A stretch of DNA of 58,774 bases, filler included, from Bipalium vagum (lineage: Eukaryota), in assembly GCA_037834085.1 (NCBI GenBank). It is 2 parts of 2 records of this genome, joined end to end, with 100 filler letters (N's around TTAATTAATTAA, not from the genome) between each part and the next. Parts side by side here need not be neighbours in the genome. Positions count along the whole stretch, not along the records: positions 29,485 to 58,774 come from JBBMKC010029991.1; 1 more part is not named here. One strand, given 5' to 3'. Position 1 is the stretch's first letter; each line of letters opens with the position of its first letter. The translations under genes and the position numbers were made by a program. The notes beneath the pieces are model-generated. The model was not told the origin of the DNA. It searched no databases and worked only from the letters and a program-made list of their open reading frames with translations. Shown here piece by piece: positions 30,756 through 58,774 of this stretch.

Positions 30756-31331
30756 ATAGCTATTTAGTTATGATTATTGAATTGAAAGAGAATGTAAAGA
30801 TACTTTTTTTATATTTGATAAGTGACAAAATTTAATGAGAAAATCGACTTCAAAATATTGCACCTACTAATTTATTGTTATTTCTACTTGAAAAAGTTTA
30901 TATCTACAAAAAGAATTAAAAAAATTAAATATACCAAAAATGTTAATTACACATTTGACATAAACCAATTTCATCTACCTCAAAGGTGATGTTTTACAGA
31001 AACATGTGATTAAATAACAATTGTCATATAAATGACAATGCACATTATTTCGACAAAATTAAAGTCAATTCAATATAAAGATTATTCCAGTACTAATGAA
31101 ATTAAATTAGAAAAAATTCAAATTCACTTCAAAGATTAATAATTTTCCCAGGCACTTCAGTCGTTTTTACTATCTGGAAAAACACTAAAAGGAAAAAACA
31201 GAGACAGGTCTTCCCTTTGAGAAAATTGATTTTTTCTAAATCAGAAATCATTTTCATTGATTAATTTTTAAAAAATCCATATTTTTACACATTTATTTAA
31301 ATTCATAGGATATAAAATCTCAAAATTGATT

Positions 31332-32504
31332 TCAACAAAAGATGTTTTCCTTATCGCCTTGGACATCTTCCATCTTGATCGCGGACAAATTTGACTTTTT
31401 CTTGCTCAGAATCTTTTTCGGAAAATGTTTGGTAATCGACGTATCGCTGCTCTTTCGTTTCGACTTTGTCAACGTGGTCCTAGAGGCCTCTCCCACAACG
31501 GCGCATGGAGGAACGTTTTGAAAATGACGACGCAAGTGAGCCAAAATGTTCGAGTTGATTACGCTCCGTCCCGGTGTAAAGGAGAACTTGATTTTGGATT
31601 CGCAGCTTTTGCTCTTGAGACAAATATAACACAGGAAGCAGCCGCGATTGGTGGGCTGGAAGTCGTCATCGAGGATCTCATAAATGTTGAAATCGCTATC
31701 TCGAACCAAATGGCAATCGATAAATTTTATTTCAGCAGCCCGAATGATTTCGTCATGAATCAATTCACTACAGAGTCGAGCGTCGGCCAAGTCCAGTACC
31801 GTGGAGCTGCGGTTTCGATTGTCCTTCATCAACATTCCGACTGTAGATTCGTTGAGAGTGTCTGTGTAACCAAAGTGTAGTTCCATGTGACCGAAAATGT
31901 TATCGAGAATGATGTCGTCTTTGTTGTCGTTGTAGGTGAATCTATCGATGTGATCGCACAGATAGCCGTTTTGAGTGATTGAACAGGAAAAGAACCCAAA
32001 TCGGTCGACCTGTTCTTCCATGTCCTTAGGATGGTACAGAGTGAAATCGAGCTCTTTCAGATGATCGGATATTCCAAATTTGTCGAGAATACTCTTACGA
32101 ACCATGTCATGCAAAGCTCTGGGAAGCGCAACGCAACCCAGTTTCGCTAAATGAAGCATACTGTAGTTACAAATCGATTTCGACATAGCACTCTTGGTCA
32201 TTAGTGGTTTTCTGAACTTCCTGCTTATCGTCCGTGACGCAAACATTAGCCGATTCTTAAGGCAAGGAGACATCTTGAATTTTCCGGGATATTCTCTGAA
32301 AACATCAGCATCGATGTATTTATTGACGTTTTCCACAGGCATCAGGCTACACACAGTTCCGATATAGGTCTCCATGTCGCTGATAACTTTTTCATTAATG
32401 TTATCAATGTCATTAATTGTCTTAAATCCACACAACTCCAACCAATCGACCACCAATTCAGACGACGTCAAATCAAGAATGTTGTTCCTCAGATTTTCAT
32501 CCAT
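31332..32504 (-). CDS. Orphan protein (~390 aa): helical N-terminal domain, two tandem atypical C2H2/BED-like modules, basic tail
   Basis: Long GC-richer ORF. Likely start ATG 32504 follows a candidate 38-nt GT-AG intron (32507-32544). Internal repeat at aa 145-229 and 263-346 of the 408-aa track ORF; KSKRK and KKILSKKK are NLS-like. Confidence 0.8.
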   Translation of the reverse strand: MDENLRNNILDLTSSELVVDWLELCGFKTINDIDNINEKVISDMETYIGTVCSLMPVENVNKYIDADVFREYPGKFKMSPCLKNRLMFASRTISRKFRKPLMTKSAMSKSICNYSMLHLAKLGCVALPRALHDMVRKSILDKFGISDHLKELDFTLYHPKDMEEQVDRFGFFSCSITQNGYLCDHIDRFTYNDNKDDIILDNIFGHMELHFGYTDTLNESTVGMLMKDNRNRSSTVLDLADARLCSELIHDEIIRAAEIKFIDCHLVRDSDFNIYEILDDDFQPTNRGCFLCYICLKSKSCESKIKFSFTPGRSVINSNILAHLRRHFQNVPPCAVVGEASRTTLTKSKRKSSDTSITKHFPKKILSKKKSNLSAIKMEDVQGDKENIFC

Positions 32505-32673
32505 TTCTGAAAAGTAAAAACCCATTATTTTGCTAAACAAATACCGATTTGATATCAAAGTGATGGGTAATAATTTTACAGAAATTTAATTCGTTACAAC
32601 TGTTTCCATTGTTGACCAATGTAAATACAAAGTTAAATTTTATATTTTCATTTTAGTTGAATTAATTATAAAC

Positions 32674-32917
32674 ATGAATTGTTCAATATTAATTATGACA
32701 ATTAAAAATAAGATTTTGGAAGACAAATTGGGGCCGAAACTCATGCCAATTATGTATAGAATACTCCTCGGAATCATCTATTCCTCCGTACTTGTTTTGG
32801 GATTTTTTGGCAATCTTTGCACTTGCTTAGTGATAATAACTAATAAATATTTACATACGGCAATCAATGTCTACTTATTCAATCTTGCCGTTAGCGACAT
32901 CGTTTTATTATTGACAG
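32674..32917 (+). CDS. PRXamide (pyrokinin/CAPA/neuromedin U-type) GPCR, coding exon 1 (TM1-TM2)
   Basis: LGPK, GFFGNLCTCLVI, LHTAINVYLFNLAVSD; donor ACAG|gtaaag, phase 1. Confidence 0.9.
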
Positions 32918-35619
32918 GTAAAGAAATATTGTAAAAGGTATTGTAAAAATAATAGCTTGTTATTAATATATCTATGTATCTATAAAAGAAATATGAATAA
33001 TTACTTTAACGATGATATTAAAACATGAATAATTTAAAATTATTAAAAATTTTATTTATATAAACAATTATGATTCTTTGTCTGAGCTTATTAATATGTT
33101 TTATTAATTAATGAAATGAATTGATAAATGATGCAAATTCAAAACAATTTATATTTAATTAAATACCTATATATTTATATATTAAAAACTTTTAACGGAA
33201 AACTAAACACTTTTAATGGTCAATCAATATTGTATGCTTTATTTTTAAATAAATTTTATTAAATAGATATAAAAATGAAAATTAAATTTTAACAGGTGAT
33301 GCTTCACAAATTTTTCTGTCTTTCATTTGTCTTTAAACTTATTTTTTTAATGAATTATTGACTCAGAAAATCTTTAATTACTTAATTCAAAATCAAGATG
33401 ATTAATTTGTATTAAATTAGCCTTTAGCAATAGTATCTCTTCTCATTAGAGTTCAGGTGAATTAAAATTTAAAAATAATAATAAACAAAAATATTAAAAC
33501 TTTAATTTTAATCCTTTAAGTTCCAAATATTTCCTTTTAGAATGAAGTAGATAAGTCTTATTTGGTAAAATATTATAAGGTTCATGAAGCCAATCTTAGC
33601 GGATATGTTTGGGTAACTCTAGGAGATATTAAAATTCAGACAACAATTAAATAAATATTTCTTTGTCTAAAACACAATGAAATATAAAATATTGTTTTCA
33701 AAATCAAGAGAACAAGATTTTTATTCTACTACATTTCTAAAAATAATTAAAATTAATAAAACTTAATATTTTGAAAACTTCTTTTTCATAAAATAAATTT
33801 GGTAGATTTAAATTTTAAATAATTTATGAATAATCATATTAAAATTATATATATCATAATTATATATTTAAGATTAGTAAAATAATTAATTTCATAATAA
33901 TATTTTAAAATTAATTATTTAAATATCTAATTATTTTTTAAAATAATTAGTAGAAAATTATTGAAATATATAATAAAGATGAAAAGTCTACTCTCCTTTA
34001 AATAAAGAAAACATAATTTTAAAAATTACAGATATCTTACTAGAGCAATTTTTACTTTTTACATTTTTATTTACTATTAATGACCTTTTCCAATCTTGTA
34101 CTGTAAGTCAGTTTTGAAGAAATTTGTTTCTTTATTAAATAAAAATTAGAAACTCTATTAATTCTAATCTGAAATCTTGCAAAATTCAAAATAACAAAAA
34201 ATAAATGAATATGAATATTTCCATCCAAATACTTACACTTTAAATTTGTTTAAAGTGACGAAATAAAAAGAAAAAAACTAATATTTTTAATAATTATGTT
34301 AATTTCTCTTGAGGTTTTAAGGTTTATTCAACTTCAAATCTTAAACACAAAATAATTACTAAACAAAAGACTGTGGTTTTTAAAAAAAAGTTTTTTTCCA
34401 GTTACTTTATTAATAAATTAATGATTTCAAATATGTTAAATAAATAATGATTAAAATTGTTTTAATTATATAATAATAACTAATCTAATAATAAAATTTT
34501 AAAATATTTATTAAAATTTTATATTTATTCAAGAATTATATAAAAGATATTTATAATATTATTAAATACATCAGATATTTTGAAAAAATTTTTTAAAATT
34601 AAAAATATAATGAAAAAGAAAATTATCAGCTGTAAAACTAGTTTTCATAAGACAGACTTTTGCAAAATTCCTGAAATTAAATAAAATTTAAAAAATGAAA
34701 TTACTTTTTCAGTTTATTGATTATAGATTCCATAATTAAAAATGTCGTGTTTCGGTATTGGGACTAATATTCCATTAAAATGAATGTTACATAATTAGAA
34801 GTACAGTTTCCAAAAGTCTACTTTTTGTAAGATCTATTTCTGAAGAAAAAGAAAATTGTTGTACAAAATATTTACGTTATATTGAAAAAAAAAATACTAT
34901 ATAGTGAATCATGTCTGAATAAGAAATTCGACTATTTGAGGTTGCAGTTAAGGGAAGAAAAATAGCAAAGGTAAGTAGAAAATATTCATAAATAATTTTC
35001 GTGCTATCTGTATAATCTACTTCGAAATTGACTTAAATTAATAACTTTTAATTAAGTTAAAACAATTTTTCAATTACAAGTTGACTTTAAGTTAATAAAT
35101 AAATAAATAAAAAATGGCAAATTTTAAATAATTATTATATTTTTATCACGAATTATAAGAAAGCACTCATTTATAGATAGTATTAATCAAATTAAATGTT
35201 AGTTGAAAATAAATCGTTACAACCCACGACTAATTTTCAATTTATCTCACATTAAATATTAAATATTAGGTTAACACAAAAGTAATGTGATTTTACTAAT
35301 TCATATTTAATCAATTAATAAATTGTTTAAATATATTAAAACAATTTTTGGCGATTTTATGAAATAAGTTTAATGCCTAGATATTTTTCAAGTAATTTGA
35401 TGAGCATGATTTAAATTTATAGATAGACAACGTGCTGAATGAAATAACATATTGTATGATTCACGAATTTTATCATGATAAAACAGTATCAGAGGTTGCA
35501 AGCTCAATTAACTAAATCTGTCCGGATGCCATGTGTCAGAAAATATCAGACAGCTTCTTGGACAGAAAGTCTAAAATTCTGATTTAGCAGCTGCTCATAG
35601 GTGAGACAGGTCACCAATT

Positions 35620-54699: not shown

Positions 54700-55334
54700 A
54701 AATTAGTATGTCGTTTTAATGCGCTTTTTTTTCTTTAGATTTGATAATGTTCCCAATGATATTGATGTTAGCTCTGATATTAATCTCATTGTGGTTCTTT
54801 TTCGTTGCGGAATAGCTAGAATTTTGTGTTTTAGTGTTTCTCGGCATAATTTCTTGAGACCAGAATTGCTCTTAATTTTTGAGCGAACATCGGCTACATT
54901 CTTACCTTGATCGACACATTCTTTAGCTCTGAACCAGATACGAGAAATATTTTTATTGCATCTGTTAAATTCTTCAGCAACTGCCCTAATATTACCTTTG
55001 GAGAGTTTATTGTTTTTCGATTGTCTAAAGAGAGATTGTAGGATACCATTTCTTTGATCGAGACAGGTTTTTCTTTCGTTGACATGACTCCATCTTTTCA
55101 AAGTTTCAAATTTTAAAATAATTGATAAATCAATAATAAAAACAAATATTTAAAATTTTTCAAAATGTGAAATTTTTGGACCATATTATGCAAAGAAAAC
55201 GTGACTTAAGAGCATATAAATTAATGTACAGCTTGCTATGATCATAATAAATAAAAAAAGACAAGTTAATAATTAATGTTCTTATGTTTAACAAAAGCAT
55301 CAAAACGGACAATCATTTCTGAACAGAGAGGTGG
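54700..55334 (-). mobile_element. Plant-type (DD39D, Soymar/Osmar-like) mariner 5' fragment
   Basis: 132-aa ORF with KL..G....VA..F......SRIW.RA...DV.S..K...G.K...IP...RTT; end reads TA|CCACCTCTCTGTTC, similar to the CTCCCTCCGT Stowaway/DD39D terminus. Catalytic domain absent. Confidence 0.7.
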
Positions 55335-55449: not shown

Positions 55450-56013
55450 GACTGCCCAGTGAAATTCTGTATTCAGTAGGGAATGCATATCCTTGGATTT
55501 CAGGAAATTTCTATTGTCACCTACGAGCCATGGTTTTGGAGATGTCGTCAGTTGTGAGTGTCTTGACAATAACAGCTTTTACAATCGAAAGGTATATTGC
55601 GATTTGCCATCCTCTGAAACAATACATCATTTCTACAATTCAAAGAAGTTCTATTTCTGTTATCTGCATTTGGATAATCGCTTCAATATCCTCTGTACCG
55701 TATGGTATATTGTGCAAATTAAATTATACAATTAACTTTCCAAACATTACATCGAATTATTCTGAGTGTCTCAATTCTCTAATAAATGAAGAAAATAGAC
55801 CCATTGAAGAATCAAATCTTTGTATTGGACCACGAAATGATAATTTCTATAATTTCATTATCAAAGCGTCCACCTTTCTTTTCTTTTTCATCCCTTTCGT
55901 CTTATTGATGATATTTTATTCTCACATAGCTCTAACATTGTGGAAGAGGAAAACGACAGCCTCTTATTCAACAAATCAACCCTCAGCCAGAAATGGAGTC
56001 ATTCGAATGTTAA
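55450..56013 (+). CDS. PRXamide GPCR, coding exon 2 (end of TM2 to start of TM6)
   Basis: Acceptor atttag|GA completes Gly: GLPSE...YPW...C...SVLTITAFTIERYIAICHPL...FFFIP...VIRML; donor A|gtacta, phase 1. Confidence 0.92.
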
Positions 56014-56529
56014 GTACTACATATTGATCAAAATTTTATGGAATTTATATTTTAAAGTATTTATAAAGGATTTTTTTGGAGAAGAGTTTTTTTTCACTTT
56101 TTACAACATTAAATACAATAATATTAATGAATTAAACACTCATCCGAATTAAAAGTCCTTTTTCGAAAAAAATTGATTGTAATTTTGATAGCCTTTTTCT
56201 TCTTCCCTTGTATCCTACACAAGTCTCCTTAAATTTAAACATTCTTGTTAATATCATTTATGGAAAAGATATATGAGGGGCTCTATATTTTAACGTAACC
56301 TCACTGTTTATTACTAAAATTTTAATAGACGATCCTATATAGTTAAGCATTAGAACTGGGTGTATATTGATAGAAATACATTGTCAAAATATTGTTTTCC
56401 ACAGTAAGACTGAGACACATCTACAAACTTTTTGAATCCTTCATAGTTGATTGAGTCGGCGGGATATTGGCTGCCGTAAAATATCAAGTTGGATAGGGAG
56501 GTCTGCTTGTGTCTTACATGGATTTTCAT

Positions 56530-57477: not shown

Positions 57478-57591
57478 TTTTTGTGGTCATAGCATTTTTT
57501 ATTTCTTGGGCTCCTTTTCACACTCAAAGAATTCTAGCGACATTCAGACAATCTATTGAAGCCATCGATGTTGTGATCTACTACTTATCAG
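57478..57591 (+). CDS. PRXamide GPCR, coding exon 3 (TM6 to start of TM7)
   Basis: Acceptor atttag|TT; IFVVIAFFISWAPFHTQR...YYLSG; donor CAG|gtatat. The NPxxY exon was not found in the window. Confidence 0.9.
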
Positions 57592-58774
57592 GTATATTTT
57601 TATATAAAATATGTAAACATTTATTAAAATGGTTTTTTATTTCTATTTTAAGAGTTCATATTATAAAGATTTTAAATAATAATTTTTGTAAAAAAAGAAC
57701 AAAATGAACAAACTTAAATCACGTTTGGTAAATATGTACGAATTATTCCCGTTTCCTGAAAGAATAGTTATTAGTGCTGAAAATTCATTTTTCTAGATCA
57801 ATTGCAAGATATTCTCTCAATGTCTCGATTAAATATTAATCCAGGAAATAAACAGTAAAGGGTCTATTTTATTTTAAGACAACGCCAGACCTCTCATATC
57901 ATTAAAGCTATTCTTCAACTTAGAGAAACAAATAATGAAATTCTTCTGCGTCCTCCATCTCTAAGTTCATTGAATTTGATGAAATTCTCTTTGGTTAATA
58001 TAAGAATTTTCAGGTTCAATTTTATTTTATTTTAATGAATTTAGTATACCACAATCTAATAATAAACTGAAGGTTGTCCCACATGAAATGACAGATTTTA
58101 GTTTTATTACTTCAATGACTTGTTAATCAAGTAATTTTTATGATAATAATTATTGTAATATATCAAACTGAATCGCAAATTTTGCAAAGGTTTTCTCCTC
58201 ATATATCTAGTCTGTTATTCTTTCAAGAATATTAAAAAAAAATATTTCTAAGATCATAGCCGATAACTCATTAAAAATGGCTTATTACGCCTTATTTTCC
58301 TAAGGCCAGGTATATACACCAGGTATTTTAGGGTTTTTCTCATTAAAATAATTATTCTTGACCATCATTCTTGATTTTATTATTAATTGTTTAATTAATT
58401 CTATAATGATAATATATATATGATGCGCCAATTAAATCCGGAAGAAAATATTTGCAATAAATCTTAAATACTAATTTTGGAACTGAGTTTATACGTTATT
58501 TATATAAAAGATTTATTGATTAACTTAAAATTATTAATCAATTGTTAGATATAAATAGTGAGTTCGAAAGCAAGGCTGGTGTAATAGAAAATAGAAATTG
58601 AGATAGAAATTGGTAATTTTTTGAACCTTTTAGAATCGACAGTGTATGACATTAGATATTTTAATAAAAATGATTTCAGCAACTACCTTTGGAAAATTCA
58701 CAATCGATCTATGTTAAGAAAATGGAATTAATATTATTTATAATAATATTATAAATAATAATATTACTATTATT

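What the first reader, a model, noticed from the sequence alone, without database searches (positions are those of the whole stretch)
31332..32558. Orphan protein built from two copies of an atypical C-x8-C-x21/22-H-x3-H module
Seen: aa 145-229 and 263-346 of the track ORF align with one gap and share HD, KF, DF..Y, D, Q, G.F.C.I, C, F and NI..H...HF. Putative ligands are C192/C201/H224/H228 and C310/C319/H341/H345. An L.LA motif precedes both copies, so the unit is about 118-120 aa. The N-terminus (WLELCGF..I.DI.......DME...KFKMSP.LK..L) looks like a SAM-like helical domain and the tail is basic. Established: SN...HL..H endings resemble BED fingers, which are common in DNA transposons. Inference: a lineage-specific nuclear DNA-binding protein, possibly domesticated from a transposon ORF. 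It is intact while the neighbouring transposon relics are decayed.
Basis: partly seen in the sequence, partly recalled or inferred. Interest (0 to 1): 0.75.

Follow-up and report, generated by a model that had tools for sequence, protein, structure and literature searches.

The report
Flatworm SAM plus zinc-module nuclear protein
This is an intact gene for a member of an uncharacterised protein family found so far only in flatworms, built from a SAM-type association domain and two copies of a BED-like zinc module, so it is probably a DNA-binding regulator and is not an orphan.

Summary
The ORF is real, but it is not an orphan. The coding sequence runs from 32504 to 31332 on the minus strand and gives 390 aa from MDENL. 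It has a full-length 45%-identical homologue in Schmidtea mediterranea, annotated as a hypothetical protein. An exhaustive phmmer search found 28 further relatives. Every relative that carries a source name is a flatworm protein.

The internal duplication is confirmed: score 85 against 26±5 for shuffles. A family HMM built without copy 1 still finds copy 1 at 5.7e-9.

The family motif is C-x2-C-x27-H-x3-H, present in 34 of 38 modules. Only copy 1 uses C-x8-C. All four modules that lack the second Cys have Cys or His at +9.

No Pfam model matches, including zf-BED and SAM. I found no transposase domain, no convincing terminal repeats and no second copy in the piece.

The likely function, by inference only, is a SAM-associating, zinc-dependent nucleic-acid-binding nuclear regulator.

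The parts
31332..32504 (-). Coding sequence, 390 aa plus stop (TGA at 31332-31334), apparently a single exon; start at ATG 32504 (MDENL)
   Evidence: ORF. It is colinear over its full length with P0001. Homologues start MDE.... GC is 0.435 against 0.22-0.27 in the flanks. The chance of 408 stop-free codons is about 4e-11 to 5e-17.
32205..32504 (-). N-terminal SAM-like domain, aa 1-100, with an inserted stretch of roughly aa 50-78
31857..32126 (-). Zinc module copy 1, aa 127-216, diverged. The +3 position is Thr.
   Evidence: Module HMM i-Evalue 5.7e-9. pLDDT about 75-90. All four residues are kept in P0001 although this copy is only 30% identical between the two proteins. The +9 Cys/His pattern is.
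31506..31778 (-).
   Evidence: Module HMM 94.7 bits. pLDDT 87-97. 69% identical to P0001. The Cys and both His are invariant in A3.
31335..31505 (-). Basic, predicted disordered C-terminal tail, aa 334-390, with KSKRK and KKILSKKKS runs that could be nuclear localisation signals (inference)
   Evidence: 13 K/R against 6 D/E in 57 aa. pLDDT below 50.
31292..31297 (-). AATAAA polyadenylation-like hexamer beginning 37 nt after the stop
   Evidence: and sequence read. Consensus match only.
32505..32673 (.). 169-bp spacer between this gene's ATG and the ATG of the divergent rhodopsin-type GPCR gene; a possible shared promoter region (inference)

Best explanation
The ORF is a functional, apparently intronless host gene. 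It encodes a 390-aa member of an uncharacterised protein family that has been seen so far only in flatworms.

The family architecture is an N-terminal SAM-fold domain, a variable linker, and one to three copies of an ~85-aa CCHH zinc module. The module is predicted as helix, three strands, helix. A C-x2-C knuckle follows strand 2, and H-x3-H lies in the last helix.

In this gene and in its Schmidtea mediterranea counterpart the module was duplicated before the two species split. Copy 2 stayed canonical and conserved. Copy 1 diverged fast, lost the second Cys, and appears to use a Cys nine residues after the first instead.

Inferred mechanism, not shown: the SAM domain mediates self- or hetero-association. 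The zinc modules, which are BED/C2H2-like, bind nucleic acid, most likely DNA. The basic tail directs nuclear import. The protein would then act as an oligomerising transcription or chromatin regulator, in the manner of SAM/PNT-plus-DNA-binding-domain factors.
For: Gene reality:
- A 408-codon open frame in DNA of about 25% GC.
- Full-length homologue P0001 (S. mediterranea AFJ24787.1): E 1.5e-90, 45% identity.
- Conservation is domain-shaped: SAM 54%, copy 2 69%, copy 1 30%, linkers 19-35%.

Family:
- 29 hits at E<=1e-3 among 1.84 billion representatives.
- I looked up 20 of the 29. Eleven carry names, and all eleven are flatworms.
- A search with the S. japonicum member found 32 proteins. All the named ones are trematodes, cestodes or monogeneans, including S. 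mansoni Smp_179890.

SAM domain:
-.

Module:
- C-x2-C-x27-H-x3-H in 34 of 38 modules.
- The first Cys, both His and a Phe are invariant in A3.
- Secondary structure comes from a model with pLDDT 87-97 in copy 2.
- All 4 modules without the +3 Cys have Cys or His at +9, against 2 of the 34 canonical modules.

Age of the duplication:
- Copy 1 of the two species groups together (support 94/91), and so does copy 2 (98/90).

BED-like lead:
-.
Against: - No experiment or expression data exist for this gene. No RNA run holds it, and read laying was uninformative.
- No Pfam model matches, SAM and zf-BED included.
- The SAM sequence hit is not significant (E 0.26).
- The +9 ligand switch rests on probably only two independent lineages.
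Confidence: 0.6

Rival explanations
1. It is an RNA-binding post-transcriptional regulator. The helix, three strands, helix modules would bind structured or double-stranded RNA, and the SAM domain would either bind RNA, as in Smaug/Vts1 (recalled), or assemble granules.
Confidence: 0.15
2. It is a protein-protein scaffold. The SAM domain and the zinc modules would both serve as interaction domains without binding nucleic acid.
For: SAM domains are mostly protein-interaction modules (established knowledge). Copy 1 evolves fast, at 30% identity, as adaptor surfaces often do. No DNA-binding family matched.
Against: The tail is basic. The canonical module is nearly invariant across trematodes, cestodes and monogeneans, with a BED-like signature.
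Confidence: 0.15
3. It is a transposon gene, either active or recently domesticated.
For: The BED-like signature is only a lead. Tc1/mariner relics lie in the neighbouring GPCR intron. A few A/T-rich inverted pairs bracket the ORF (I4, I7, I8, I9).
Against: Those pairs are 71-78% complementary A/T strings in DNA of about 25% GC. None of 31 family members has a transposase domain. No second copy lies in the piece. Conserved orthologues occur across flatworm classes. The duplication is older than the split from Schmidtea.
Confidence: 0.04
4. It is a chance ORF or a dead pseudogene.
For: There is no RNA evidence for this species.
Against: Chance probability is about 1e-11 or less. There is a full-length conserved homologue with domain-shaped conservation. 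An AATAAA follows the stop.
Confidence: 0.02

Closest known systems
Schmidtea mediterranea hypothetical protein AFJ24787.1 / UniProt I1ZID3 (P0001)
   Same: Same architecture over the full length: SAM-like domain, diverged module with C-x8-C, canonical module with C-x2-C, basic tail. 45% identity, E 1.5e-90.
   Different: No function is recorded. Copy 1 is only 30% identical.
Neodermatan orthologue group (e.g. S. mansoni Smp_179890, O. viverrini T265_00944, E. granulosus 'expressed conserved protein')
   Same: They share the N-terminal SAM-like domain and the CCHH module. The module is almost invariant among them.
   Different: They have one module, not two. They carry long low-complexity linkers and N-terminal extensions and are 400-770 aa long. 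On the module tree they group with other free-living-type sequences, not with this gene.
BED zinc finger (Pfam PF02892)
   Same: C-x2-C ... H-x3-H with the Cys pair before a strand and the His pair in a C-terminal helix, and an SN(I/V)..HL..H ending. zf-BED clusters are the nearest named clusters by language-model features, at 0.76-0.78.
   Different: The Pfam model matches 0 of 31 proteins and 0 of 20 modules at E<=10. The Cys-to-His spacing is 27. There is an extra N-terminal helix and strand. No hAT transposase partner was found.
SAM domains (SLy1/SASH3, Hyphen/CNK, tankyrase, LEAFY oligomerisation domain)
   Different: No Pfam SAM model matches. The domain carries an insertion of about 30 residues. 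Oligomerisation is untested.

Membership tests
Unnamed flatworm SAM + CCHH-module family (defined here from the hits) | N-terminal ~100-aa domain matching the family profile | tested here: met
   107.5 bits, i-Evalue 5.4e-34. The window sequence was itself in the profile. The independent support is phmmer hits to the N-domain of P0002, P0003, P0004, P0008 and others at 1e-12 to 1e-16.
Unnamed flatworm SAM + CCHH-module family (defined here from the hits) | C-terminal ~85-aa module with invariant F, C, H, H | tested here: met
   Copy 2 scores 94.7 bits. Copy 1 scores 27.4 bits at 5.7e-9 and was not part of the profile.
SAM domain | Five-helix SAM fold superposable on solved SAM domains | tested here: met
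SAM domain | Match to curated SAM sequence models | tested here: not met
   No SAM family at E<=10 for the window protein or for any of 31 members. The profile against PDB gives E 0.26, which is not significant.
SAM domain | Self- or hetero-association | not testable with these tools
   Needs SEC-MALS, two-hybrid assays or a crystal structure.
BED zinc finger (PF02892) | C-x2-C-x(n)-H-x(3-5)-[HC] ligand signature (signature recalled) | tested here: met
   Copy 2 has C292-x2-C295-x27-H323-x3-H327. 34 of 38 family modules are canonical. Copy 1 does not meet it, because its +3 position is Thr.
BED zinc finger (PF02892) | Match to the Pfam zf-BED model | tested here: not met
   0 of 31 full-length members and 0 of 20 isolated modules at E<=10.
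BED zinc finger (PF02892) | Fold similarity to solved BED fingers | tested here: inconclusive
   Only the whole model could be searched. Copy 2 was 'barely tested' according to the tool. No BED entry was listed.
DNA transposon gene (hAT or other) | Transposase catalytic domain in the protein or its relatives | tested here: not met
   No Pfam transposase domain in 31 members.
DNA transposon gene (hAT or other) | Terminal inverted repeats and multiple copies | tested here: inconclusive
   Only weak A/T-rich inverted pairs were found. No second copy lies in the 29-kb piece. The rest of the genome could not be searched.
WRKY/FLYWCH-type fingers | C...C...H-x-H with the His pair on a strand (recalled); match to the Pfam models | tested here: not met
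   No such Pfam hit. The His pair is H-x3-H in a predicted helix.

The most novel reading that the evidence does not exclude
The ~85-aa module is a new, flatworm-restricted zinc-binding nucleic-acid-binding domain. It is absent from Pfam and is not merely a diverged BED finger. Joined to a SAM oligomerisation domain, it defines a phylum-specific regulator family. That family is kept as what looks like one orthologue per species in all major groups of parasitic flatworms, and it has expanded and tandemly duplicated in free-living ones. Its zinc site can move one ligand from +3 to +9.
Probability: 0.3. Interest if true: 0.65.

Novelty: new variant of a known kind. Interest (0 to 1): 0.45.

Why it matters
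Genes restricted to flatworms and conserved from planarians to schistosomes, liver flukes and tapeworms are few. They are sought as handles on flatworm-specific biology such as stem cells and tegument, and as parasite-specific targets.

This work turns an 'orphan' into a definable family with two recognisable domains, a clear ligand set and named orthologues in model species: S. mediterranea AFJ24787.1 and S. mansoni Smp_179890. RNAi, localisation and DNA-binding tests can now be designed.

The apparent shift of a zinc ligand from +3 to +9 in diverged copies is a small but testable point of zinc-finger evolution.

Tried and rejected
Searches that found nothing useful:
- The word-indexed protein search found nothing for the window protein. 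With the family alignment it found only 2 proteins, so it is insensitive for this family.
- The single-sequence AlphaFold model was useless, with pLDDT 31.
- Foldseek against PDB gave no row at E<=1e-3.
- The module profile against PDB sequences gave only E 0.8-3 rows: TRIM31 RING, CTCF and INSM1 C2H2 fingers, and TFIIE.
- Whole-protein ESM features gave unnamed arthropod and rotifer clusters at 0.88-0.90. These are a lead only and I did not follow them.

Readings considered and rejected:
- eledh (Smp_041540) as a possible relative. Passages read in PMC6039179 describe it as a schistosome-specific transmembrane protein.
- WRKY/FLYWCH.
- zfp-1 and zfp-1-1, the 'flatworm-specific transcriptional regulators' of PMC5927768. 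I saw that paper only as a search listing and abstract. From recall they have classical C2H2 fingers. I did not compare them.

Literature:
- Zero papers were found for AFJ24787, I1ZID3, six parasite locus tags or accessions and Smp_179890.
- 'BED zinc finger' plus 'planarian' gave one unrelated review.
- I recalled that AFJ24787.1 may come from Wagner et al. 2012. That paper (PMC3338251) is not held, so this stays unverified.
- Supplementary tables, which are closed, may list these genes in expression or RNAi screens.

Other checks:
- RNA evidence: none. Only one coded run, X1, of unrecorded kind, holds the DNA.
- Read laying placed only 17-22-nt low-complexity bits of three contigs and nothing on the ORF. 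The tool says a filter leaves records out, so this says nothing.
- The search of earlier findings gave no relative of this gene.
- dN/dS was not attempted, because no nucleotide sequence of any homologue was available.

Full report
**The sequence.** The window holds a 408-codon open frame at 31332-32558 on the minus strand, counted from a TTG. It sits in DNA of 22-28% GC, while the ORF region reaches 43.5% GC. A stop-free run of that length has a chance of about 4e-11 to 5e-17, depending on the composition assumed. Homologues begin MDE..., aligned with the Met encoded at 32504. An AATAAA begins 37 nt after the stop. The protein aligns colinearly over its whole length with its closest relative, so the coding part appears to be one exon.

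**The repeat.** Shuffles give 26.4 +/- 5.0, and 0 of 1000 reach 85. As an independent check, I built an HMM only from the family columns aligned to copy 2. It finds copy 1 of the window protein at i-Evalue 5.7e-9 and copy 1 of the Schmidtea protein at 3.2e-9. The proposed upstream 'L.LA' extension is not above chance: 1848 of 2000 shuffles reach its score.

**Not an orphan.**
- Pfam gave nothing at E<=10. PDB sequences gave only noise. The word-indexed search gave nothing.
- The exhaustive phmmer scan of 1.84 billion representatives gave 29 proteins at E<=1e-3 and 14 at E<=1e-10.
- The best hit is P0001, 389 aa, E 1.5e-90, 45% identical over the full length. It is S. mediterranea AFJ24787.1 / I1ZID3, annotated 'hypothetical protein'.
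- I looked up 20 of the 29 hits. Eleven carry names, and all eleven are flatworms: Schmidtea, Cichlidogyrus, Calicophoron, Spirometra, Fasciola, Paragonimus, Opisthorchis (its cluster also holds Clonorchis), Dicrocoelium, Protopolystoma, Schistosoma japonicum and Mesocestoides. Nine have no name. The other nine hits were not looked up.
- A search started from the S. japonicum member found 32 proteins. Every named one is from a trematode, cestode or monogenean. All are hypothetical or automatically named ('Sal-like', 'Zinc finger protein', 'Expressed conserved protein'). They include S. mansoni Smp_179890.

**Architecture of the family.**
- Most members have an N-terminal domain of about 100 aa, a variable linker and one C-terminal module.
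- The window protein, P0001 and P0013 have two modules.
- P0007 and P0027 have three and two modules and no detectable N-domain.
- On a maximum-likelihood tree of 37 modules, the two copy 1 sequences group together (94/91) and the two copy 2 sequences group together (98/90). The duplication therefore predates the split from Schmidtea.
- The tool warns of long branches for copy 1.
- Identity to P0001 is 54% in the N-domain, 30% in copy 1, 69% in copy 2 and 19-35% elsewhere.

**The zinc ligands.**
- In the 20-module alignment A3, one Phe, the first Cys and both His are invariant.
- Across 38 modules, 34 have Cys at +3, giving C-x2-C-x27-H-x3-H.
- Four modules lack the +3 Cys: copy 1 of the window protein, copy 1 of P0001, P0023 and P0025. 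All four have Cys or His at +9, against 2 of the 34 canonical modules.
- These four probably represent only two independent lineages, so the association is suggestive and not proven.
It is Asn in P0001, whereas C313 at +3 is conserved.
It is likely to be the functional arrangement only in copy 1.

**Structure.** With a 31-sequence alignment, AlphaFold2 gave mean pLDDT 78.8. The blocks were 80-96 for aa 1-100 (above 90 for seven of the ten blocks), about 75-90 for copy 1, 87-97 for copy 2, and below 50 for the tail. pTM was 0.41, so the arrangement of the domains relative to each other is not defined.

*SAM domain.*
- 21 of the 26 rows carry SAM in the entry title.
- The other five are the LEAFY oligomerisation domain, EphA2/SHIP2, liprin, SARM1 and TIR-1. 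From recall these are SAM or SAM-like regions.
- The second-look search agrees.
- The family sequence profile against PDB sequences picked the same SASH3/SLy1 SAM as its only two hits, at a non-significant E of 0.26-0.30.

*Modules.*
- Each module is predicted as helix, three strands, helix. The C-x2-C follows strand 2, and the H-x3-H lies in the last helix.
- No specific fold match emerged. Foldseek gave nothing at E<=1e-3.
- By the tool's own statement, copy 2 was barely tested.

**BED or not.**
- For copy 2, language-model features rank zf-BED and zf-C2H2_12 clusters nearest among named clusters, but only at 0.76-0.78. The tool calls this a lead.
- The Pfam zf-BED model matches none of 31 members and none of 20 isolated modules.
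- I therefore describe the module as BED/C2H2-like and do not file it as a BED finger.

**Transposon origin.**
- No transposase or other recurring Pfam domain occurs in the family.
- tBLASTn finds no second copy in the 29-kb piece.
- The inverted pairs that bracket the ORF are 71-78% complementary A/T strings.
- The Tc1/mariner relics (40519-40848, 45954-46580) and a DUF7769 fragment (54703-55101) lie in the intron of the neighbouring GPCR gene. They are unrelated to this ORF.
- The family's conservation across flatworm classes argues for an old host gene.

**Function.** This is inference. A SAM domain ahead of zinc modules with a basic, disordered tail (13 K/R in 57 aa) fits an oligomerising nuclear nucleic-acid-binding regulator. 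I put about 0.6 on that reading. I put 0.15 each on an RNA-binding role and on a pure protein-interaction role, and a few percent on a transposon gene or a non-gene.

No expression data could be obtained. No paper mentioning the Schmidtea or parasite counterparts was found in main texts. Supplements were closed.

Noticed in passing
window 32674-32934 (+), 55530-56027 (+), 57483-57707 (+): A rhodopsin-family GPCR gene (7tm_1, E 6e-7 and 1.4e-17) starts 169 bp from this gene's ATG on the opposite strand. Its first intron appears to span about 22 kb and holds transposon relics.
   Followed up: partly
window 40519-40848 (+), 45954-46580 (-), 54703-55101 (-): Decayed Tc1/mariner-type fragments inside the GPCR intron: a Sleeping Beauty-type HTH (E 2.2e-8), a mariner-like C-terminal piece without a Pfam hit, and a DUF7769 ORF (E 2.1e-13).
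   Followed up: partly
window 32505-32525 (-): The sequence ttttacttttcag lies directly before AAATGG, the start codon. This could be a splice or trans-splice acceptor just upstream of the start. An in-frame ATG 7 codons upstream (32525) is not matched by the homologues' starts.
   Followed up: no
P0007 and P0027 (proteins): These family members have three or two zinc modules and no detectable SAM-like domain. The module therefore also occurs on its own, in tandem arrays.
   Followed up: partly
P0023 aa 171-257 and P0025 aa 179-265: Two unnamed family members lack the second Cys of C-x2-C and carry His nine residues after the first Cys. This parallels the Cys at +9 in copy 1 of the window protein.
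   Followed up: partly
window 31425-31880 (+): A 151-aa ORF lies antisense inside the coding sequence. It is most likely a by-product of the GC-richer coding region.
   Followed up: no
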